Assembly: GCF_016432865.1 (NCBI RefSeq)
Contig: NC_067400.1
Coordinates: 612,002,001-612,066,000, forward strand
Length of the DNA stretch: 64,000 nt
DNA from: Antechinus flavipes
Lineage: Eukaryota
Direction of reading: 5' to 3'
The position numbers and the translations under genes are program-made. Of the stretch, positions 30,560-44,600 are shown one piece after another; within the stretch, counting starts at the first letter, position 1, and each line of letters opens with the position of its first letter. The notes below the pieces were generated by a model, which was given only the letters and a program-made list of their open reading frames with translations, searched no databases and was not told the origin of the DNA.

Positions 30560-30960
30560 CCCGGCCCAGGACCTGGGGATGGGCCGCGGACAGACAGCTC
30601 TTCACCTCCGTCTTAGGCCACCGCAGCGGCTTAGGTCCCACGGTCTCACCCTTGCCCGCCCGCCCGTTGCTTCCATTGGGCGGCGTGGCCGCTCGTCTCC
30701 TGAATAGACCAATCAGAAGTCTTAACGGCCACCTCCCGCTCGAAGCCCCACCCCCAACCATTCTTCCGGAAACCAACTAACGTCCTCCGGCCCAGCCGCG
30801 CGGCGCCTCATGGGAGGTGTAGTTCGTGCCCCGATCTTCCCTTCACGTGTCCTCTGAGCCTGGCCGCGCGAGGCACTATGGGAGGCGCAGGCTGAGACTG
30901 CCGCCACGGTTCCTGGGACTTGTAGTGCCAACGGCTTAAAGGGGCTCCTGGAAGAAAAGG
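30560..30960 (-). promoter_or_regulatory. LIN37 CpG-island promoter
   Basis: CCAAT boxes (about 30675 and 30709) and ACTACAnnTCCCA motifs at 30811-30823 and 30914-30926. Confidence 0.7.
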
Positions 30961-31669
30961 GAAGGAAAAACGCAATCTCGCGGCAGTTCTGCGTTGCTAG
31001 GCAATGGATGCCGCCTCTGAGCAATGGAGCAGCGGCGCAAAGCTGATTCCTTGTCTAGGTTCATTTTACTGACGTGGCGAGTGAGATTCATGGGGTGGGG
31101 GCATTCTGCTGCCAAGGGTCACCCCTTCAAGATCCCAGCAGCCGAGAGCCGAAAGGAATCGTGCAGCCGAACTCTCCCCTCCCCCGCAGCTCACTGTGCA
31201 CTTCTTTCTGAGCCCTCTTCGCCCCTCCACGGTCCGCCCACGTGGAGCAGCCGTTGCCAGAGTCCAGCACTCCCAGTTTAAACCCCGCCAACAGCCCAAG
31301 TTTCGCTTTCCTCATTTATCAAATGAAGGAGTGGCCGAGGGCCAGCCCCTCCGCCCCTCCCCCCATTCCTGGAAGTCAACCTCTCCGTTCTACTTCTCAG
31401 AAGCCCCCACTGCTTCTCCTTCCAGGCTCGCCTCAAATGCCACTTCCTCCATGAAGGCTGCCGTGACTATCGCCCGTCCTCCCCCGCCCCCGGGGGTCAG
31501 CGCCGTCTGGGGCATCCTTCCCAAGAGAATGTTAATTGGGGGTGGACCCGGAGACTAGCGCCCTGTCTCGGGCAGAAATGGCTGGCCAGCAAGTGGCCGG
31601 ATCTCTTTTGTAATTGCCTATTTTATATATTCTCCGGGGTAGCTAAGTGTGGAATGGATAGAACTGGGG

Positions 31670-31885
31670 GGGGGGGGGGGACCTGGAATCAACAAGTCCT
31701 GAGTTCTAACCTACTCCCAACCACTTCCTGTCGGTGTGACCCTGGGCAAGTCCTCTGCACCTTGTCTGCCTCCATTTCCTCATCTGTAAAACGAGCCGGA
31801 GGAAGGAATGGAAAACCCCTCCAATGTCTGCCAAGAAAACCTCAAATGGGGTCACAAAGAATCAGATTACAGAACAAGAAATCCG
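31670..31885 (+). mobile_element. Marsupial Mar1/WALLSI-type SINE (CORE with RTE-like tail)
   Basis: tgtgaccctgggcaagtc...tttcctcatctgtaaaa followed by ggaatggaaaacc..tgccaagaaaacctcaaatggggtcacaaagaatc. Confidence 0.75.
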
Positions 31886-32559
31886 TTCTCTATACATTTG
31901 CATGTTCTCTAGCCTAGTGTTTCACAGGTTACTTAACCAGTTCCTCTACTAATGAGACCCAGTCACTAACTGGGAAAGTCAAACCCAGACTGGAAGGACT
32001 GGTCCAGAGTCACTAGGTTCTGGTTCTAGGTCCAGGCCTTTCCCTCCTACAATATTATTCTTTCTCCTGTGTTATCGAGGGGCCGGATCCCTAAGAGGTC
32101 CGTGGGTAAATCATGCTGTACAACACCATGTACAAGCTTCCCATTGCTGAGGCACTTGAAAGAGATGCTAGCTGACCTCTTGTGGTTTGGATCCTTACTC
32201 AGAACCTTCCCAGATTTGAGATTCCATGATTCTAGGGTGTGATCTCTCAGGGATTTGTTTCTATGTGAAGTAGGGAGATCCCACCCCTCCCAGAAAAAAT
32301 GGGAGTAGGGATCAGCAGTTCTCATGAAATATGCCTTTTTTTTTTAATTTTTATTTGGGAGTCTCAATGGAGGCTACAGGGAAAAGTGGGAAATTAGTCA
32401 GGGATAGATGTTCTGGGTAGCCATTCCGGCCAAATAAAAGGCTGGGGATATGAAGGATATGAGATTTTTCTTCATCTTTGGAAATCATACTGGTCCAGCG
32501 CTAGAGATAAGGCGGGTGAGAAGGGCACCAGGCCATGAATTGGCAGAGGCTCGAGCTTA

Positions 32560-33280
32560 TCAGGGTATCCCCAAAGGGATGGTGAAGGAGAGATAGTCGC
32601 CCAGGGCACCCCAGCGGGCACGATTGATCTGGAAGATGGTGATCCAGGAGGTCAGTGCCACAAGCCAAAAGACAAGCCCCAAGGCTGAACGCCAGACGTC
32701 TGGAAAGGAAGAGATAGAGGGAAGAAAAAAAGGGGGGGGGGGGGAATCAGGTCTTGGCTGGCCAAAAATTGATTTACCACTTGCCCCACCAGACTAGTGA
32801 GGGGGCCAGAGCGTCTCTGCCCTCACCCCGGCACCTCCAGAGACTTACAGCCCTTGATCTGCCCCTGCTCCTCGTAGGCTGGCGCCAGGAAAGCCTCTCG
32901 GAAGAACCACAGAACGTTAACCAGCCAGAGAAAGGGCAGGAGTGCAAACCCCCCTGGAAAGGAAGGAAGGGGCATTAGTCGGGCCATGGTGGGGACACTA
33001 GATGGGCCACTCCCTGGGGTGGGGCACTAGCAGGCTCGTCCCTTCTGGGGGCAGTCACCGCGTTGGCTACTCCCTCCCGGGGAGCATTCGATGGGCTCAC
33101 TAACCAGGTCATTCCCTGGGGGACGGGCACTAGTTGGGCCGCTTTTGGCGGGGGGCGATGGAGGAGGAGGGCTGAGCCCCCTGGGGTCGCCGCGCGCCCC
33201 TAGCCCGTGCCCACCTCACCTAGGTAGTATTTCCGGCAGAGGTTCAGCTTCTCCTCATTGGACACCCGTTCCAGGTTCAT
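32560..33280 (-). CDS. PSENEN: Gamma-secretase subunit PEN-2, 101 aa
   Basis: Exons (minus): 33280-33220, 32953-32849, 32699-32560 (306 nt). [33 protein letters not shown]...[23 protein letters not shown] (minus) at 32350-32355. Confidence 0.98.
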
Positions 33281-33559
33281 CCTGGTCCAGGAGGAAGATG
33301 AGGAAGGGCTGCAGGGAAAAGGAGACGAGTCGGGATCTCCAAACGTCCCCCGCTACCGTACTGGAGCCCCAGTCGGTACAAGTCACTCCTGTGGCGAGTG
33401 AACGGGCTCCGAATCAGCGAGAGGAGGGGCAGGAACAAGAATGCCACCCCCGACCCAGAGAAGGGAGAAGAAGGGGGTGAGGGATTGGGGCGGGGGTGGG
33501 GGGGTGGGGGGGAGCAGTCCTCTACCTTACTGTAGCTTTTCCTTCCTCCTTCTTCAGTA

Positions 33560-33866
33560 CGCTTGCGCCTAGTGCCGTCGGGGCTTCTGGGACTTGTAGT
33601 CCATCCTCCGCACGCACGCGCCCTTCCCTCACTTGTAACCCTGAGACTCTCTCGGGGAGCTCTCTTCTCTGCCTCGCTCTCAGGTTCAGTCTCTCTCGCC
33701 TCGCGATTGGCTGGGAAAGGCGGTCCGGGGCATCTTTTCTGCGCGGCACCTCCCCCTACTCTCTGGACTTCAATTCCCAGGGATCCTCACCTCAAAGCTA
33801 GCCCGGAAACGTGCTCTGTAACCGGAAGTGACGCATGAAGCAGACAGGTGGAGGGAGTCGGTGAAA
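33560..33866. promoter_or_regulatory. Bidirectional PSENEN / U2AF1L4 promoter
   Basis: Head-to-head genes. ETS-CRE composite CCGGAAGTGACG at 33822-33833, ACTACAAGTCCCA motif at 33588-33600, CCAAT (attgg) near 33706. Confidence 0.75.
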
Positions 33867-35772
33867 ATGGCTGAATATCTAGCTTCGATTTTCGGGATAG
33901 AAAAAGACAAGTGCGAAACGATAGTGGTGATAGGAGGGGTGGTCGTGCTAGGGACCCAGCCACTGGAGTCCCCGGGGAGGGGCGGCATTGGTCTCCTTTA
34001 GACAAGGTGCTGGGGTGAGAGGTCCCACTAGGTAAGGGAGGAATGGCAGATCCCACTAGGCAGGGTCCTGGAGGGGGAGGGGGAGCATTGGGGGAGGGGT
34101 GGCAGGTCCCACTTGATGGGGGAGGGGTGGCAGGTCCCACTTGATGGGGGAGGGGTGATAAGTCCCTTTGATAGGGGAGGGGTGGCAGGTCCCACTTGAT
34201 GGGGGAGGGGTGGTAAGTCCCTTTGATGGGGGAGGGGTGGCAGGTCCCACTTGATGGGGGAGGGGTGGCAGGTCCCACTTGATGGGGGAGGGGTGGCAGA
34301 TCCCACTTGATGGGGGAGGGCTGGCAGGTCCCACTTGATGGGGGAGGGGTGGCAGGTCCCACTTGGCAGGTCCTGGGGAGAGGGGAGACTGGGTCCTTTG
34401 ATGGGAGAGGGGCAGCAAGGGCCTTACCACCTCATTCACCCCAAACTCTCGCACTTTTTTCAGGATTAACTGCTCCTTTTACTTTAAGATTGGGGCCCCG
34501 TGCTCGCAACTCCACAATAAGCTCACATTCAGTCAGGGGATGGCCCTTCCCAGCCTTGTTCACTTCCCCGACGCCCCCTCTTCCCTCCCGCTGCCCCTGC
34601 TTTGGGCCCCTGGCTGACCCCTCTTTCCCACCTCATCTCCCTCACCTCAGCCATCGTGCTTCTCAACCTGTACCGGAACCCTCAGAACACGGCCCCGACA
34701 GCGGACGGATCCCACTGTGAGGACTGGGCTCGGGACGCCTCTGGAGCGGGCAGGGGTGGGAGTGATGGGAGATAGTGGGAACCCCACCAAGCTCGGGAGG
34801 GGGGAGCCTTTGGGTTGTGGGGGTGGTGACATAAAAGACTTGAATGTCAGAACTAGGGAAAGGCTGGGGAGGGGGTTGCTTTAGCCCCAAGACCCTTTTC
34901 ACCCCTGAATTCCCAGCTCGTGTCACTGAGGTAGAGGTGCAGGAGCACCATGACGGTTTCTTTGGGGTGAGGGGAGCTGGCCCTGGGGGGGCTCCCTGAG
35001 CCTGACTGCCCATCCCTCCCTCCCTGCCGCAGGAAGCGATCACGGAGCTGCAAGAAAAGTACGGGGAGATGGAGGATATGAACGTCTGCGATAACTTGAG
35101 GGACCACTTGGTGGGCAACGTCTACGTCAAGGTGTTTGAGGCCGCCTGCTCTTGGGGCCCTTGCTCGCTCCCAGACCGGACCCCTCCCCGACCTCTTGGA
35201 TTCCCCAAGCAGTCTCCTTCGCGGGGCCCTGGGCCGTCCGCCCCTGCTCGCCAGGGCCTCGGGGGGACTCCCGCTCTAACTCCTGGGCCGGCATCTTCCT
35301 TGTGCCCCCAGTTCCGGCAGGAAGAAGACGCGGAGCGCGCTGTGACCGAGCTCAACAACCGCTGGTTCAACGGGCAGGCCGAGCTGTCCCCCGTCACGGA
35401 CTCCGGGAGTCCTGCTGTCGGCAATATGAGATGGGGTGCGGTGGTGAGGGGCGGCGGGCGTGGGGGGCGAGGCTGGGCTGCGGTTCCACCTGCCATCTGA
35501 TGCCACAGTGAGTGCACCCGGGGCGGCTTCTGCAACTTCATGCACCTGCGGCCCATCTCCTGGGACCTTCGCCGGCAGCTCTACGGCCGTGGCCCCAGAA
35601 GAAGGTATCGGGTGGGGCGTGATGGGAACGGGGATGCTGACCCCTTTGCTTGACCCGCGAGCCCCTGACGCCTTTCCCCAGGGGATCCTCGCCCACAAGA
35701 CCCAGAGGGGGACACCGGCCTCGAGAAAGGAACCGACGACGGTCTCCGGACCACCGTCACAGATGCTTCTGA
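33867..35772 (+). pseudogene. U2AF1L4: U2AF1L4 (U2AF26) with multiple disabling lesions
   Basis: Exon homologs: 33867-33910, 34464-34536, 34651-34716, 34917-34966, 35033-35131, 35312-35435, 35509-35604, 35682-35772. Lesions: 15-nt deletion in ZnF1 (GACRHGDRCS becomes GAPCS); intron-2 donor GT to GG (34537-38); 1 nt missing at the start of exon 3; 9-nt deletion after GQA; 1-nt frameshift at gactccggg (about 35399-35405). AATAAA at 35883-35888. Confidence 0.85.
34085..34375. repeat. About 28-30 bp minisatellite (GGGGGAGGGGTGGCAGGTCCCACTTGAT) about 10 copies, U2AF1L4 intron 1
   Basis: Direct tandem units visible. Confidence 0.9.
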
Positions 35773-36767
35773 GACCCCGAGCCCGGCCTCTGCTCGGCCT
35801 TTCCAGGACAGAGGTTGCTGTGGTCTTCCCCACCTGACTTCTGGGGACCCACACGGGAGGAGCAGGAACCCCCCCTTCCCCCAATAAAGTATCTGGTCTG
35901 TCCTTTGGTGTCTCTGCGCTTGGGGGGGGGGGGGACTGTGCGCTGCAAGGGCAGGGGCTGCGGCCGTTGGGGCGGGCGGGGAGCAGGTGTGCGCCCGACT
36001 AGCTGGGAGGTTCTAGGTGTACCCCTCATTTTACAGAGACAGAAACTGAGGCCCAGAGAAGTCTTCCAGAGTCCAGCCGGGGCCACCCCACCCCCACCCC
36101 CACGTGGATGACTGGCTCTGCCCGGAAAGGGAAGTTAAGGGAGGGGCTGGGGCTCTGAACCCGCGGCAGGACCAGCTTCAGGTGCCAGGGTGGGGGTAGG
36201 GAGGCTTGGGGACCTTCTTGGACCCCTTAGGACTTTCTGGGCCTGGGGGAGGGGAGACCACAGGCTCGATGGGCCGGATTTGTTAAGGGGAAGGGTTTCT
36301 GGGGACATGGCCGAGGCCAGTTTTAGGGACAGGGCCCCACAGGGTTGCCTGGGTCTTGGAGGCAGGAAGTTGAAGGGCGAAAGCTTGAGTCTTTGGTGGG
36401 GGGACAGTGTTGGGGTCCAGAGGCTGAAGAGCCCCGGGCCTTGGTTGGGGGAAGAGTGGGTTGGGAATCCCAAAGAGTGAATGGGGAGGGGAGGGGCAAG
36501 AAGCAAAACCTTCACGAGAACAGGTGGGGTCTGGGTGGAGAGGGGGTGTTGGGCAAGAAAGGAGCCATTTGAGGGGCACTGGGGGGGCTACAGGAGGGGT
36601 TCCCAGTGGGGGATGGGTTGCTCAGAGCCCAGCCTGTTCCTCCGGCCTGAACAAGCACCATCTGGGTGGCGGGCGGAAACTCGGCTGAGGTTTTCTCATA
36701 AAGCGCTCAGTTCCCTGGTTCCCTCTCCAGGGAGGAGCGGTGACTGGGGCACAGGCTGCAGCCGCCC

Positions 36768-38173
36768 ATGGGGCTCCGCCTCCTGCTGTGGGGGGCCACC
36801 CTACTGTCCGGGGCCTCGGGCTTGGTCCCCGTCTCCTGGCGCTGCGGCTTCCTGGAGTACTGGGACCGGGACTACAGATGCTGCAGGCGCTGTGTGGAGC
36901 GCTTCGGACCCCCCAGATGTCCAGGTGAGGGACGGGGCCGAGCCAGGGCTGTGTGGGAGCCCTGGCCCACTGGGCATTGAGCCTCTCTTCTCCCTCCTCC
37001 CCTCAGATTACGAGTTCACCCGCCACTGTGGGGTCACTGATGAAGGCAATCAGCTGGATTTCCCCTATGCTCGGTGCCCACCTGGGCTGTGCAACAGGAA
37101 CTGGGCCGAGCAGTGCGGGCAATGTCCGGACCAACCTCTGCCCTCAGCCCAACCCCCTGCAGCCCGGGATGGACACCTCCAAGTCCGCTGTTCTCCAGTA
37201 AATCCCTGGGGGGGACGGGAGGGGGGACGGGGACGCACCCATACGGCGACCTGCTGGGATGAAGGCCACCAGCCTCAAAACCTGTGACCCTTTTCTGCCT
37301 CCCAAGAAACCCATACCCTCCAGGAGACGGTGCCAGCTGGAAAATACAACGGTGCCCACGATGCCCACAGCTCCCATGGCACCCACAACATCCTCATCTC
37401 CGAGCCCCCGAGGTCCAGGACCGAGCTCTGGGGAAGGCCCCAGCAGGCCGCCTCCGTCCCCGGTGCCTCCTTGTAAGTGCCACAGCGCCCCCTCCCCCCC
37501 TCCTCCGTCTCCACAGCGGGGCTCACACCCACCAGAGTCTTTTTCAGTCTTTGCAGGGAGCACGGTCTGGTACGTGGCGGGCGCTGCTGCCCTTCTGGCC
37601 GGAGGCCTGCTGCTTTGGGCTGCCGTGCAGACAGGGAGGTGGAGGGCCGACACCAAGAAGGCGGCACAAGCTGGAAAAGTCTGGAAATTCTTCCCCTTAA
37701 GTGAGGGGTCTGGTGAGTGGGGGGAAGGGGGAAGGAGTGGGCATAGGGCTCAGGACTCCCTTGTTACCACGTCCCCTTTTCTTCCAGTGCCCCCCACTTT
37801 GGCCCGCCAGCCCCTCTCGCGACTTCTGGACGAGCTCGAAGTGCTGGAAGAGCTGGTGATCCTGCTGGACCCTGAACCCGGGCCCTGCGGGGGTTCTGCC
37901 TGGGGAACCACTCGCCATTTGGCTGCCCGCTATGGGCTCCCGGCCTCTTGGGCCACCTTCGCCTACTCCCTGCGGCCAGCCCACTCCCCGCTCCGTGCCC
38001 TGCTGGAGACGGTGACGGCGCGAGATCCCTCGGCCCAGCTGGGACAGTTGGCCCACCACCTGAGCCAGCTGGGGCGTGGTGACGCGCTGGGGGTGCTGCA
38101 TAAGCTCCTTCAGCCGCCCCCTCCCCCCAGCCCGGCCTGGAAGCCCCTTGCCATGGGGACGGATCCTTTGTAA
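36768..38173 (+). CDS. IGFLR1: IGF-like family receptor 1 (TNFR-like Cys-rich ectodomain, transmembrane segment, death-domain-like tail), about 351 aa
   Basis: Exons 36768-36924, 37007-37197, 37307-37472, 37557-37712, 37788-38173; the middle junctions are less certain. CGFLEYWDRDYRCCRRCVERFGPPRCPDYEF; transmembrane VWYVAGAAALLAGGLLLWAAV; QPLSRLLDELEVLEELVILLDPEPGP; TTRHLAARYGLPASWATFAYSLRP. AATAAA at 38179-38184. Confidence 0.93.
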
Positions 38174-38696
38174 CAAGAAATAAACCAGGCTGTCCCTGCG
38201 CTCTGGCTCTGCGTCCTAAGTGGGGGAGGGGGGCACGCCACAAGACCGAGTGCAGGGGTTCTGGCTTTACAGACTTGGGAACCGAGGCAGGGCTGAGGAG
38301 GGCTCCGTATGCCATCCTAATGGTAGGGACAAAAAGGCCTGGCAAAAGCCCAGGGCCTCAGGGCCCTCTCCCATCAGCATCGCCCTCCCCCTCCCCCCCA
38401 GTCAGAGGCTGTGGATCCAAACATTGACGGACTTTATTGTGGGGGGAGTCCCCCCTGGGACCCCACCTTTTAAATAAAAAAGTGCATAGAAAAGAAGGGA
38501 TTTAGAAACCTTTGTACAATATATCTACATCCTGGACCCTGCAGGCAGGTGCTAACTGGAAGAGGGCAGGCAGGGCTCCCTGGGGACACGTGCTGAGGCT
38601 GGGGGTGGGTGGGGGGGAGAACAAGATGGCCAAGGACACGGGTGGGGTCCCCTCAGGGCCAGGCCAGGGGTGACAGCTTGGGCTGGGGGGGGCGGG

Positions 38697-41600
38697 TCAG
38701 TTGAGGAAGCGGCGACAGCGCTTGGCCCCACAGTTGCAGGGCAGCTTGTTGCTGGCGTCCTCGATGGGGAACTTGTAGTCGTAGGTGAGCTCCTCCCCCC
38801 GGAGGATGCGCCGGAGGGCAAAGATCACGATGTGCTTCTGGCCCTCCACGTGGATCACGCGGGAGAAGCAGTTGGGCTCGCATGAGTGGTTGATGAAGCG
38901 CGCCGCGTTGCCGTGCATGGTGGCGTCCACCACATCGAAGTCGTCCATGCGGAACATGTAGCACCCGATTCCCTGCCGAGAGGGGCCGCCTGGGTGAGCC
39001 TCAGCTCACGAGCCCCCAGCCCGGCCAGCCCACGGACCCCCTCACCCACCTTGCCATCGTAGAACTTCTCGCGCTTGTCAGTGAGCACCGAGCGGATCAC
39101 GATGCCCGAGTACTCGATGACCATCTCTCCCGCATCTATGTTGCGCTTACAGAACAGACCCCGGCCGTGGATGGCCGACCTGCGGGGGCGGGGCACCACT
39201 TACTTGTGGGCCCGCCTCTGGCCACAGCCTCGAGTCATCCCCAGAAGCCACCAGCCCCCCCCCCTTACCTGTAGACCCCCACGGCCTCTTTGGACGTCTT
39301 CTTGAGGTGCCGGAAGCGCATGGCCATGGGCAGCTCCAAACTGGTGGCACGCCTAGGGCAGGGAAATAGGCAGCCGCCCGCTCCAGGCCCACCCCCGCTT
39401 TTCTGTGGGGTGCCCCCACCCCCGCCTGGACTGCCCCCCCACCCCATACCTGGTGGACCTGAGCTGCACCTCGTCCTCCTCCTCGTCACAGGCGGCCCCC
39501 TCGGGCAGCACGCGATGCTGGGACGCCAGGAAGTTGAACATGTCGAAGGTGCATTTCCTGAGGACACAGGATCCATGCTCAGTGGGGAGCCGCTCCCCAG
39601 CCCCGGGGTCAGCAGCCACCTCCCCAGAGGGCCCGGAGGCCTCCCTGCTCACCGGAGGTAGACTTCGGCGCGGGCGGCTCCATGGGGGTTCAGGGGGGGC
39701 TCTTCCTGCCCCTCCCCCTGCTGGTGGTATCGGAACTTGTAGTGATGGCAGCGCTGGGCGCCGGGGAGCTGCTCCGCCAGGAAGATCACGGCGTCGTGGT
39801 GAATGCCCAAGAGCCGCGCGCCGCTCATCCCTGGGCCACAGCGGGAGGGGGGAGGGCAGGGGCGTCACCGGGGGAGCCTCCCTTCGCTCTGTCCCCCCAC
39901 CCACTCCGCCTCCCAGATCCCAGCTCACCACTGAAGGAGAGATGCCTGAGCCGGGCGTGCCCACGGGCCTCCTGGACTTTCTCGATCAAGGTGCGCCAGG
40001 CGCCTGCCAGGAGGGGTCTGTTAGCACCCATGCCCCGCCCGCCCGGTCCCCCAGGCCCCCAGCACCCCCCACTCACCTTCCAGGCTCTCTGCTTCCACAC
40101 TGAAGCCGTCTTCGCTGCTGATCTCAAAGCGAAGGTGGGGGCCCGCCCGCCGGGGCCCTTGGTTCTCCTTGTCTTCGGGGGATGGCGGATCGTCCTCTGA
40201 ACTCGATGCCTCACCTGCCGGCCCGAGGGAGGTGCTAGCCACAGCGTCCCACATGGACCGCATCCCCTCCCCCCCAAAAGCCTTAGCACTCCCAGCCCAT
40301 TCCCTTCCAGGGGAGGCGCCCTACCTGAGTAGTGGTGCCACTGGGGCTCAAGCAGCAGGTCGGGGGGCCCTTCGGAGACCTTGGGGAGGCTGCAGTCTGG
40401 CAGCGGGAGCAACGGGGGCCGGTCGGGGAGGGTCCTGGGGAGAGGAAGACGACGATCAGGACTCACAGAGGCAGAGGCCAGGATGTGTGGGGGAGAAGAA
40501 AGGCAGCACTTACATGGGACTCTCCCCCCTGCTCGGCTCCCCGGGGGCGTCCAGGTCCAGGACCCCCCGCACGGTGGGCGTTTTCATGCGTACTCTGCTC
40601 AGTCTGGTAGGAAGGAAGGGGCCGGCGTTTGAAGAGAAGACACGGCCCTGGGCCTGTGGCTCCCTCCCACCCTCTCCCCTCCCCCCTCCCCCAGTTCCTT
40701 TTTGCCTCCATCACCACTCACCCACTGCCCAAGGTCCCCACTGGTTGGGGGGTACTCTCGAGGGAATCTCCCTCCCCATCCAGCCGGGGGGCCTTGTTTG
40801 GGGGGGGTGCCGAGGGACTGCGGCCAGCGAAGGTTGACACCCTCTTGACTCGAATGGCCGGGCGGGGGGGGCTGGGGGGCCCGCTGCTCAGCACCAGGGT
40901 CAGCGATGGGGGAGGTGGGGGTGGAGGGCGCACCACCCCCACCACAGGCAGCACACTCAGCAAGGGCCCGGGGGCGAGACCCCAGGCTGGGCTGGCAGTC
41001 GGAGGGGTCGGCGGGGGCCGTTTAGGCAGAGGCGGGCCCGGATCGCTCTCCCCGGCCATTTTCACAAACACCTGGCCCAGTTTGTTTACAAGAATGATCT
41101 TGGAGGCAGCAGTTTTGGGGGGCTCGGGGGCGGGGCTGAGGCTGAGGACTCGGACTCCGGGAGCCCCGGGAAGCCAGGCAAACGTCCGGGGGGGATCGGC
41201 TGGGGCGGGGAGCGGAACAGGGGGGGCCTGGCTGCCATTGGCCAGGGAGGGCGGCGGCAGGGGGGGGTCTTCGCCAGGGCCGGCCCCACCCTCACCAGCT
41301 CCACCTAGGTTCTTCAGCACAAACTCCACAATCTCTGAAGGGAGGTCCTCGGGCGGCCTTGCTCCATCCCCTCCTCCCCCCCCACCTCCTACCCCTCCCA
41401 CTCCTGGCCCCGAATTGGGGGCTTCCTGGCCCCGTGGCTGCTGGACAGCCTCAGCTTCGCTGTCTGTGCCATCGTCCACTCCGTCCAGTTGTTCGATTCG
41501 GGGGGTTCCAGGTAGCGGACCAGGGGGCGGGGCGGGGCCAGGCACCACAGTGGGGGGGAAGTGAATGTAGTGGGTGGGGGGGCCGGCCTCCTCCTCCGAG

Positions 41601-44600
41601 CTATCCCCCGGGGCCCCCCGGCTATTGCCCCCAGCCCCCTCCGCCACAATCTCCTCCTCCTGGAAGGGCTCGGACCCCAGCAGGCTGGCCGCAAAGTCCA
41701 AGTCGGCCGCACTCAGCCCCGGCACCACCTCCATGTCCTCAAAGTCAGGGCCCAAGTCCTCAGGAGGAGGTGGGGGGGAGGTGGCTGGGCCGGGGGGAGC
41801 CAGCTCCCCTGAGGTAGGCATGAGGGCCTCGAGGGCTGAGGTAGGAGGGGGCACCCTGAGCTGAGGAGCGGGCCGGGGGGGCGGGGAGGCCCGTCGGGGT
41901 GGCAGCCGGGACGCCAGGGGGCTGGGACGGCGGGAACGTCTTGGGGGAGCCGGGAAGTCAGGATCCCCGACCGTTGGGATGTGGTGGGACAGAGATGATG
42001 GACTTCCTGGAAGGGAAGAGACCACGGGACAGCTGACCCTCCCGTCCTCAGGCTCCCGAGGTTGGGCGACTCTCCCGTCCCCACGCTCCCAGGGGCCGCC
42101 CACCCTATCAGCGGGGGCATTCACACTCACCGGGGGAGGGCAGCGGCCAGCAGGAGACGCCTCCTAGGGGCCTTCGGGAAGGGGAGTAGTTGGGCACTTT
42201 GATTCTAGCCCCTGAGACAGACCGTGGGGCCGGGGAGGGGGCGACGCTTGGCTCTGGAGGAGGGGGTAAGGGGCCCGTGCTCTGGGCAGGGGAGTAGCGC
42301 TCAGGACCCTGGCAAAAGGTGTCAGGCCCTGGTTGGGGGGGCTCGGCTCCCAGCAGCTCTGAAATCACATGACACACAACATCAGGGGAAGGGGAAGGTG
42401 TCCTCCCCGTAGCCGTTAACCTGTGGCACTCCCTTCCCTGCAGAGCCCCAGGGGTTCAGAACCAAGCTCTCTGGCACTGAGACACCTCTGGGCCCTCCCC
42501 AAGCCCAAGGCTCCCCAAAAGTACTCAGCGCTTCCTCGGAGGCCTCTGCCCGGCCCCCACTGCCGGGGCCTCCCTTTGGACTGGCCAATTACAGCCCGTC
42601 TTTCTCCCGCCTGTCCCATTTCCAGCACCGAGGCTCTCAATCCCAACCTCTCCCCTACAGATCCCTCTGTCTCCGATCCCTCTGACATGACCACAATCAT
42701 CTTCCTAAGGCATGAAATGTACCCTCAGTCTCCACCTCTTCCAGCTCCATAAGGCTCTGGGCTTCCCACTGAACCACACTAGCCCGGCCGGCCCCGCCCA
42801 CCCCCGCGGTCTGCCCCCTGGCAGACATTACAGCATCTCCCCTTTTACCAGTCTCTGTCCTAGCCCCCTCCTCCAAGACCCAGCTCGAGGCTGCACCCCC
42901 GCACCAAGCCTTCTGTGAGGACCTATGACCCCGGCCCCCGATACCAGACTGTCAAGAGACAAACAGCCCGGCGTCCCACCCACAAGGGCTACCACGGAGC
43001 TGGATGCGGAGCCGAACAGGGGACGGGGGCTGCAGAAGGTGGGAGGCGGCCTGTCCCTAACGGGTGAGGGCAGGGCATACCTGCGGGGGGGATGGGGCTG
43101 TGCACGATGGTGCGGTTCTCCTCCGCTGCCCCGATGTGGTCAGGCTCCTCCCGAGGGCCCCGGGGTCGATACTCGAGGATCCGGCACCGATACCAGCAGC
43201 GCCGCCGGGCGTCCACTGTGCTCCAGTACAGACGCGAGCACCTGAAAAGCGAGGAGGAGAAGTGACCGAGAGGGCTTGGGGCCTGGGGCCGGCTCCCGGT
43301 GCCTCCCACACACCCCTGGTGTGCCCGGGCCTCTCACTGGTAGCCAATGGGAAAGAGTCTTCCCTCGCAGTCCGACAGGTCAGAGAGCGTCCCCAGTGAA
43401 TCGATTCGGATAGAGCCTGCGAGAAGAGAGCAACAGGCTGAGCGTTGGGAAGGAGCCAAGGAGCCCAGTGTCCCGAGGGAGTGGGGAGAGAATGGGCACT
43501 TAAGAGAGGGGGAGGGGGTCTCACCAATGAGCACGTTGATGGCATCTGGCTCCAAACCCGTCAAAAACTTTCGCTTGAAACTGATGCCCTCGAAATCAAC
43601 ATAGACGCGGCGCAGAACGTCAAAGCCATCGGGAGTCACGATCTCCTAGGTGGGGGAGAAGGGCGTCAGGAAGCTTCGCAGCCCCCACGCTGCAGTGCCC
43701 CCGGTAACTGGCCGAAGGTCTTGGGGGTGGGGGTGGGGGTGGTGATGGGGCTGGGGGCAGTTAGAGGGCCCAGGTCCGCAGAACATGATGGAAGGGGGAG
43801 ACTCAAGAGAGGACCGGGCCAGCTCAGGGGAGACGGAAGGGAGAAAAAGCCCCTCTCCCGAAGGCCACAGCCCCACCTTGCCATCCAGGAGGTCCGTGTG
43901 TTTTTGGCAAAAAACCTTCTTGTCATCCTGGAAGATGCAGCAGCTGGCGCGGGCGCACATGAAGTGGAAATTGCTAAGGCAGGAGGACAAGCAGCAGCCC
44001 ACAGTGGCCCCAGGCTTCAGGCACAGCTCACACCTCTGAAAGGACAGCAGGGATCATGGACACCCCGGGACACTCTCCTCCCAGGCCCTTCGGCCACAAG
44101 CCCCACCCCGGTCGGTCAGAACCCTGCGGCTTCCAGGTGATCCCCGAGGGCGGTGGGCAAAGAAAGCCAAACAAGCATTTTCCTTTTAAACCTGATGGTG
44201 ATCCCAAGAAATAGGAGTCGTGGGTGGGATTTCCAGTTTCATTTTTGGACTAGGTAAAAGGCTGGCGCCACCACGGTGGCTGCCAAGGTGCCCAAGCCCA
44301 ACGCAGCCCCGGTCCTCACCATCTGCCGGCCGCGGGCCACAGCAGCGTGAACGTTCTTGAGGGAGCCATCGTTCTCCTCAAACACTTCCGCTGACCAGAT
44401 GGCACAGTTGACGTGCGTCCACTCGTTCTGTCCGATGTACAGGAGCCTTCCAGCCTCCTGGGTGGGGGGCAGAGTTAAGAAAGAAGAGGAGAGAGGACCC
44501 CAGAAGAGGAGGGTCCTAAGTGAGGATCCCAGGGTGGGCTGGGGGGCTGAGCAATGCCCACCTACAGAGCCACCTGTCTTACCTTGGAGTCGGCGTCCCC

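What the first reader, a model, noticed from the sequence alone, without database searches (positions are those of the whole stretch)
33867..35888. U2AF1L4 (U2AF26) appears to be a unitary pseudogene in this marsupial
Seen: five lesions (15-nt deletion removing a ZnF1 Cys, GT to GG donor, 1-nt loss at exon 3, 9-nt deletion in the UHM, 1-nt frameshift before ZnF2), plus changes at conserved residues (YDxFFEE to HDGFFGE; DNLGDHL to DNLRDHL). The exon-6 frameshift finds no stop before the polyA signal. Neighbouring genes with many homopolymers show no frameshifts, which argues against assembly error. Knowledge: U2AF26 is the U2AF35 paralog implicated in CD45 splicing in T cells and in PER1 regulation in mouse. 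Inference: lineage-specific loss of a core-spliceosome paralog.
Basis: partly seen in the sequence, partly recalled or inferred. Interest (0 to 1): 0.75.

Follow-up and report, generated by a model that had tools for sequence, protein, structure and literature searches.

The report
Dead U2AF26 splicing gene in antechinus
In the yellow-footed antechinus, the highly conserved splicing-factor gene U2AF1L4 (U2AF26) sits in its usual place but is broken in several ways and still transcribed into mis-spliced RNA, making it a well-supported but ordinary kind of lineage-specific gene loss.

Summary
The window is Antechinus flavipes: a 13.4-kb stretch of GCA_016432865.2 matches it with no mismatch. An 8-exon U2AF1L4 gene lies at 33867-35772 (+), between PSENEN and IGFLR1/KMT2B.

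Each is absent from Sminthopsis, wombat, wallaby and two opossums, whose proteins are almost invariant (omega 0.02-0.05).

Short-read contigs of two coded runs carry the same lesions, so they are not PacBio assembly errors. One haplotype has an extra G in exon 2. That turns the in-frame 15-nt deletion into a net 14-nt frameshift with a stop in exon 2.

An RNA-like run shows the locus is transcribed but mis-spliced:
- intron 2 is retained, behind the GG donor;
- exon 4 is skipped;
- introns 5 and 6 are retained;
- a read-through splice runs past the polyA signal.

The Antechinus branch has 17 nonsynonymous and 8 synonymous changes (omega about 0.6). This does not differ from neutrality (p=0.24) but differs strongly from the background (p=1e-10).

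Two points stay open: whether another copy exists elsewhere in the genome, and whether the Tasmanian devil, quolls or other antechinuses share the loss.

Verdict: a transcribed unitary pseudogene, a new member of a known kind, of moderate interest. The scan had not noted this gene before.

The parts
33867..33910 (+). Exon 1 (ATG at 33867; donor GT at 33911). It carries T11I in the reference haplotype; the RNA-like contig has the ancestral ACA.
34089..34365 (.). 28-nt minisatellite (10 copies) in intron 1
34464..34536 (+). Exon 2, 73 nt instead of 88. A 15-nt deletion between 34496 and 34497 removes CRHGD of zinc finger 1. The other haplotype has an extra G after 34499 (net 14-nt deletion, stop in exon 2). 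The piece no longer matches Pfam zf-CCCH.
34537..34538 (+). Destroyed exon 2 donor (GG in place of GT). Intron 2 is retained in the RNA-like contig, and read-through reaches a stop about 34615.
34651..34716 (+). Exon 3, lacking its first base (1-nt deletion at the acceptor)
34917..34966 (+). Exon 4, heavily substituted (RVTEVEVQEHHDGFFG). It is skipped in the RNA-like contig (joint 34716 to 35033).
35033..35131 (+). Exon 5 (start of the UHM), in frame but with V>A, F>I, I>M, E>D and G>R
35312..35435 (+). Exon 6, 124 nt instead of 134. It has a 9-nt deletion after 35373 and a 1-nt deletion at 35402 (TTC to TC), which frameshifts zinc finger 2.
35509..35604 (+). Exon 7 (zinc finger 2 in the ancestral frame; R>W in the reference haplotype, ancestral C at 35561 in X1)
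35682..35772 (+). Exon 8 coding part in the ancestral frame (stop at 35770-35772)
35883..35888 (+). AATAAA polyA signal. The shifted frame stops only at the TAA at 35885-35887.
35896..36036 (+). Intron of a read-through transcript (35895 joined to 36037, GT..AG) that runs past the polyA signal towards IGFLR1

Best explanation
This is the orthologous, intron-containing U2AF1L4 (U2AF26) gene of Antechinus flavipes, in its ancestral slot between PSENEN and IGFLR1. It has become an unprocessed (unitary-type) pseudogene.

Constraint was lost after the split from the Sminthopsis lineage. Since then the coding sequence has drifted: about 17 amino-acid changes, two in-frame deletions that hit zinc finger 1 and the UHM, two single-base deletions and a lost splice donor.

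The promoter, probably shared head-to-head with PSENEN (inferred), still fires. RNA is therefore made, but it keeps intron 2, skips exon 4, keeps introns 5 and 6 and partly reads through into IGFLR1. No transcript seen can encode a ZnF1-UHM-ZnF2 protein. U2AF35 presumably covers the splicing function (inferred).
For: - Identity and synteny. L006 (A. flavipes) equals window 30768-44173 with no mismatch. PEN-2 lies upstream and IGFLR1 and a 2734-aa KMT2B-like product lie downstream, the same order as in five other marsupials.
- Lesions. All five are specific to this species in six-species alignments. The exon 2 piece has lost its zf-CCCH match, while orthologues score 1e-13.
- Reality of the lesions. 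A 1704-nt short-read contig (X1) and RNA-like contigs (X3) carry all of them. A second haplotype adds a frameshift and a stop in exon 2.
- RNA. Exon 1 is joined to exon 2, intron 2 is retained, there is a 34716-35033 joint, introns 5 and 6 are retained, and there is a 35895-36037 joint.
- Selection. The Antechinus branch has 17 nonsynonymous and 8 synonymous changes, omega 0.62. This does not differ from neutral (p=0.24), against p=1e-10 for omega 0.04. Background omega is 0.02-0.05.
- Annotation. No U2AF26 protein of A. flavipes is among the top hits of two protein searches, although its IGFLR1 is present. The deposited annotation holds only a 132-aa product without a domain there, which I reconstructed as an off-frame ORF.
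Against: - Omega is 0.62, not 1, and the counts are small.
- X1 and X3 may come from the same individual as the assembly, or from its other haplotype, so independence between individuals is not shown.
- The run identities are coded. That X3 is RNA is inferred from its GT..AG joints and its small size.
- Logan contigs drop rare isoforms, so a minor correctly spliced RNA cannot be excluded.
- A genome-wide search for a replacement copy was not possible.
Confidence: 0.9

Rival explanations
1. The frameshifts are errors of the PacBio CLR/wtdbg2 assembly and the real gene is intact.
For: The assembly is PacBio CLR with wtdbg2, polished with Pilon (PMC9290055). Such assemblies carry residual indels. 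One indel (the G after 34499) does differ between the assembly and the short-read contigs.
Against: De Bruijn contigs of two short-read runs reproduce the 15/14-nt and 9-nt deletions, the GG donor and both 1-nt deletions. Multi-base deletions and 17 amino-acid changes are not typical assembly errors. Neighbouring PEN-2, IGFLR1 and KMT2B are annotated intact.
Confidence: 0.02
2. The locus still makes a useful protein through alternative splicing. One route would use the GT four bases upstream (34533), which together with the shortened exon 3 restores the frame. Another would be an isoform skipping exons 6 and 7, as in mouse.
For: Splicing from 34532 to 34651 would be in frame, losing only two residues (read from the sequence). 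An isoform skipping exons 6 and 7, with a function in PER1 control, exists in mouse (PMC4893061).
Against: - The RNA-like contig runs straight through intron 2, with no branch at the exon 2 end.
- Zinc finger 1 lacks a Cys or is frameshifted, depending on the haplotype.
- No shift of donor or acceptor restores the frame around exon 6 (checked by eye).
- Two haplotypes predict different truncated products.
- Substitutions look neutral.
Confidence: 0.04
3. The gene was not lost but replaced. A retrocopy or duplicate elsewhere in the genome now supplies U2AF26, as the scan found for GPKOW in this same genome.
For: An earlier scan note (s1-211341) describes such a replacement for another splicing factor in this genome.
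Against: - In X1, with about 96% of 3.1 Gb of contigs read, only the locus itself was laid on the exons at 85% likeness or better.
- No 'U2AF 26 kDa' or similar protein of A. flavipes ranks among the top 120 hits of a search with the Sminthopsis protein.
- Caveat: the reads tool silently drops human-like contigs, and unannotated copies would be missed.
Confidence: 0.04

Closest known systems
U2AF1L4 / U2AF26 of other marsupials (Sminthopsis crassicaudata XP_074162829, Monodelphis domestica XP_001363961, Vombatus, Notamacropus, Gracilinanus)
   Same: Same flanking genes, the same eight exons and intron phases, and 78% nucleotide identity across the locus to Sminthopsis.
   Different: Those genes are intact and nearly invariant at the protein level. 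This one has five disabling or damaging lesions and about 17 extra amino-acid changes.
Unitary pseudogenes of mammals (class described in PMC2864566)
   Same: An unprocessed relic at the ancestral locus, with intact orthologues in relatives, no known functional counterpart, and still transcribed.
   Different: The absence of a counterpart elsewhere in the genome was only partly tested here.
U2af26-deficient mouse (Preussner et al. 2014, as summarised in PMC4893061)
   Same: Loss of U2AF26 function is compatible with life.
   Different: The mouse is an engineered knockout with clock-resetting defects. Here the loss is natural and old, and nothing is known about any phenotype.
GPKOW relic in the same genome (scan note s1-211341)
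   Same: A conserved splicing-factor gene decayed in place in a dasyurid.
   Different: GPKOW was replaced by a retrocopy in all marsupials. For U2AF1L4 no replacement was seen, and the other marsupials keep the parent gene.

Membership tests
U2AF1L4 (U2AF26) orthologue | Position between PSENEN (head to head) and IGFLR1/KMT2B | tested here: met
   Searches show the same gene order in six marsupial loci
U2AF1L4 (U2AF26) orthologue | Eight coding exons with the family's boundaries and phases | tested here: met
   Per-exon alignments
U2AF1L4 (U2AF26) orthologue | Closest named relatives are the 26 kDa paralogues, not U2AF35 | tested here: met
   of the three best hits, two are Sminthopsis 'U2AF 26 kDa' (the first is a fluke hypothetical protein), and most named hits after them are U2AF 26 kDa too. 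The C-terminal tail matches Sminthopsis in all but two of its last three residues.
U2AF1L4 (U2AF26) orthologue | Intact ZnF1-UHM-ZnF2 reading frame | tested here: not met
   ZnF1 lacks a Cys and has no Pfam match, the UHM lacks 3 residues, and ZnF2 is out of frame
Unitary (unprocessed, orphaned) pseudogene | Disabling mutations at the ancestral locus, introns kept | tested here: met
Unitary (unprocessed, orphaned) pseudogene | Lesions real rather than assembly artefacts | tested here: met
   short-read contigs of X1 and X3 carry them. Independence between individuals is not shown.
Unitary (unprocessed, orphaned) pseudogene | Neutral substitution pattern on the affected branch | tested here: met
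   omega 0.62, p=0.24 against neutral and p=1e-10 against omega 0.04. This is a simple parsimony count, not a likelihood model.
Unitary (unprocessed, orphaned) pseudogene | No functional copy elsewhere in the genome | tested here: inconclusive
   Searches found none, but no whole-genome search was possible
Processed pseudogene | Intronless copy away from the parent locus | tested here: not met
   All seven introns are present and the locus is syntenic
Polymorphic pseudogene (an intact allele still segregating) | An intact haplotype present in the species | tested here: not met
   both haplotypes seen are broken. Only a few samples were examined.

The most novel reading that the evidence does not exclude
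The decay of U2AF26 may not be a private accident of one species. It may have begun in the dasyurid ancestor.

Exon 4 is invariant in wombat, wallaby, opossums, platypus and turtle. In dasyurids it carries 3 amino-acid changes shared by Antechinus and Sminthopsis, 4 more in Sminthopsis, 2 more in Antechinus and one site changed differently in each. Sminthopsis as a whole runs at omega 0.2.

The omega-based estimate puts full inactivation at about half to 60% of the way back to the Antechinus/Sminthopsis split. It could therefore be shared by all Phascogalini and perhaps by quolls and the Tasmanian devil. That would make a whole radiation of carnivorous marsupials natural U2AF26 knockouts. They could be used to ask what this temperature- and clock-linked splicing paralogue is for.
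Probability: 0.3. Interest if true: 0.55.

Novelty: new member of a known kind. Interest (0 to 1): 0.42.

Why it matters
U2AF26 is among the most conserved proteins in this comparison, with no amino-acid change outside the tail across about 70 million years of marsupial evolution. In mouse it is tied to clock resetting (PMC4893061), and by recollection to CD45 splicing.

A natural, old knockout shows that the paralogue is dispensable in at least one mammal lineage. It also offers a comparative handle on its function in a genus studied for semelparity, stress-driven immune collapse and torpor.

For annotation, the locus should be labelled a transcribed pseudogene rather than an uncharacterised 132-aa protein. 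No paper in the searched library mentions it.

Tried and rejected
- Compensating splice shift. I considered that the GG donor and the exon 3 base loss cancel out through the GT at 34533. In principle this is in frame, but the RNA-like contig retains intron 2, so I rejected it as the main form.
- Rescue of the exon 6 frameshift. I looked for donor or acceptor shifts that would restore the frame and found none.
- Isoform look-ups. Look-ups with isoforms X3 and X2 failed because only the longest product is indexed. This was solved through the cluster members.
- Runs of the relatives. Organism B (X5) and organism C (X9) gave nothing usable in read laying, so the sister species could not be scored.
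- Tasmanian devil. Neither U2AF26 nor IGFLR1 of Sarcophilus appeared in the protein searches. The region may simply be unannotated there, so I draw no conclusion.
- Joined models. I did not search with a joined multi-exon model, either the U2AF26 exons or PEN-2 to reach other dasyurid loci.
- Divergence dates. Two papers gave no Dasyurinae/Sminthopsinae date.
- Refusals.

Full report
**What is there.** Reading 33400-36400 and translating each exon by reference gives an eight-exon gene on the + strand:
- e1 33867-33910
- e2 34464-34536
- e3 34651-34716
- e4 34917-34966
- e5 35033-35131
- e6 35312-35435
- e7 35509-35604
- e8 35682-35772
- AATAAA at 35883-35888

A stop-free stretch runs through exon 5, intron 5 and exon 6 (window:35033-35497). 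I could therefore use it by reference in the word search. The best named hits are 'splicing factor U2AF 26 kDa subunit', led by the dasyurid Sminthopsis crassicaudata. The family is also annotated in platypus, turtles, frogs and caecilians.

**Which genome.** The IGFLR1 protein of Antechinus flavipes led to locus L006 (GCA_016432865.2, CM028219.1). It equals window 30768-44173 with 0 mismatches in 13,406 bases, so the window is A. flavipes. The gene order is PEN-2 (minus strand), this gene, IGFLR1, then a 2734-aa KMT2B-like product. It is the same in Notamacropus, Sminthopsis, Gracilinanus, Monodelphis and Vombatus. This is therefore the orthologue in place, not a copy.

**The lesions.** Per-exon alignments of six marsupials show that all five lesions are confined to Antechinus:
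- a 15-nt deletion in exon 2 that removes CRHGD and with it a zinc-ligand Cys;
- GG instead of the GT donor of exon 2;
- loss of the first base of exon 3;
- a 9-nt deletion in exon 6, three residues just after the RWFNG motif of the UHM;
- loss of one T at 35402, which shifts zinc finger 2 out of frame.

The exon 2 piece no longer matches Pfam zf-CCCH. Intact orthologues match it at 1e-13, and they align along nearly their full length to the solved U2AF23 and U2AF35 structures.

**Are the lesions real?** The assembly is PacBio CLR with wtdbg2 and Pilon polishing (PMC9290055), so indel errors were a fair worry. The look-up of sequencing runs listed twenty coded runs that hold the stretch or part of it. 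Read laying on four of them gave these results:
- X1: a 1704-nt contig spans 34440-35900. It has 10 substitutions and one insertion relative to the window and no change at any lesion.
- X3: it covers exons 2-3 and 5-8, again with every lesion.
- X5 and X9 (the relatives): nothing usable.

The insertion, a G after 34499, occurs in both X1 and X3. It turns the exon 2 lesion into a net 14-nt deletion with a TAA stop a few codons later. X1 also has ancestral bases at 35319, 35412 and 35561, where the reference has derived ones, two of them amino-acid changes.

So at least two haplotypes exist. Both are dead, and they differ by a frameshift and by replacement changes. That is what neutral drift predicts.

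Caveat: the samples are coded and may include the assembled animal. This shows independence from the long-read assembly, not necessarily from the individual.

**RNA.** X3 holds only 72 Mb of contigs and shows GT..AG joints at annotated exon borders. I take it to be RNA-seq (inferred; the A. flavipes project made 106 RNA-seq samples).
- One 857-nt contig starts with 30 bases of exon 1 joined to 34464.
- It then runs without a break through exon 2, intron 2 and exon 3, and jumps from 34716 to 35033, skipping exon 4.
- It continues unbroken through exon 5, intron 5, exon 6, intron 6 and exon 7.
- Intron 7 is seen both spliced and unspliced.
- Another contig joins 35895 to 36037, so it splices past the polyA signal towards IGFLR1.

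Reading through intron 2 meets a stop near 34615. The locus is therefore transcribed, most likely from the promoter region it shares with PSENEN (inferred). The dominant RNA cannot encode U2AF26.

I had considered that the GT at 34533 plus the shortened exon 3 would restore the frame. The contig gives no sign of that junction.

**Selection.** I counted changes codon by codon, leaving out codons split across introns. The four non-dasyurids served as the ancestral state.

| Branch or comparison | Nonsynonymous | Synonymous | Omega |
|---|---|---|---|
| Antechinus | 17 | 8 | 0.62 |
| Sminthopsis | 7 | 10 | 0.20 |
| Shared dasyurid stem | 5 | 40 | 0.04 |
| Pairs of the other marsupials | | | 0.00-0.05 |

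The Antechinus ratio fits neutrality (binomial p=0.24). It rejects omega 0.04 (p=1e-10) and differs from the stem (Fisher p=2e-6).

I found no cited date for that split. From memory it is about 25 million years, which would put the loss in the middle Miocene. That is older than the 6.8 Ma Antechinus crown and the 11 Ma split from Murexia. This estimate is rough.

**Annotation and other copies.** The annotation stored with the deposited genome has only a 132-residue product without any Pfam domain at 34618-35511. The simplest model that fits those coordinates is an off-frame, 5'-partial ORF.

No A. flavipes U2AF26 protein appears among the top 120 hits to the Sminthopsis protein, although A. 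flavipes proteins are in that database. In X1, only the locus itself was laid on these exons at 85% likeness or better, with 96% of the contigs read.

Both results argue against a second copy. Neither is a whole-genome search, and the reads tool drops human-like contigs without notice. An earlier scan note on GPKOW in this genome shows that replacement by a retrocopy does happen here, so this rival is kept at a few percent.

**Comparison and novelty.** This is a transcribed, unprocessed pseudogene of the unitary type (class reviewed in PMC2864566). U2af26-deficient mice are viable, with clock-resetting defects (PMC4893061), so a natural loss is plausible.

No paper in the library links U2AF1L4 with marsupials. 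The A. flavipes genome paper does not mention U2AF or pseudogenes. I rate it a new member of a known kind, of moderate interest.

Whether other dasyurids share the loss therefore stays open.

Noticed in passing
L002:4476-4587 (Sminthopsis exon 4) and window 34917-34966: Exon 4 of U2AF26 is invariant in wombat, wallaby, two opossums, platypus and a turtle. In dasyurids it carries 3 amino-acid changes shared by Antechinus and Sminthopsis, plus 4 more in Sminthopsis. The NCBI model for Sminthopsis needs a shifted exon 3 donor. Constraint on exons 3-4 seems to have relaxed in the dasyurid ancestor, perhaps in favour of the isoform that skips exons 3-4.
   Followed up: partly
window 35895-36037: An RNA-like contig splices from 8 nt after the U2AF1L4 polyA signal to 36037, upstream of the IGFLR1 coding start (about 36768). 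This is a read-through transcript linking the dead gene to IGFLR1.
   Followed up: partly
window 34089-34365: A 28-nt G-rich minisatellite (10 copies, 90% matches) lies in intron 1. BLAST shows a repeated array at the matching place in Sminthopsis.
   Followed up: no
window 35132-35311: Intron 5 is 180 nt, a multiple of three, and stop-free, giving a 143-aa ORF across exon 5, intron 5 and exon 6. Similar exon-intron-exon ORFs turn up for U2AF1-like genes in contigs of unknown origin (P0005, P0011, P0015).
   Followed up: no
window 34618-35511 (L006:3851-4744): The annotation stored with the A. flavipes assembly calls a 132-aa protein without a domain over exons 3-7 of the dead gene. It looks like an off-frame artefact and should be re-labelled.
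   Followed up: partly
window 34499-35561: The two haplotypes differ at 11 sites in 1461 nt (0.75%) across this locus. That is locally high, in line with the high heterozygosity reported for A. flavipes.
   Followed up: no
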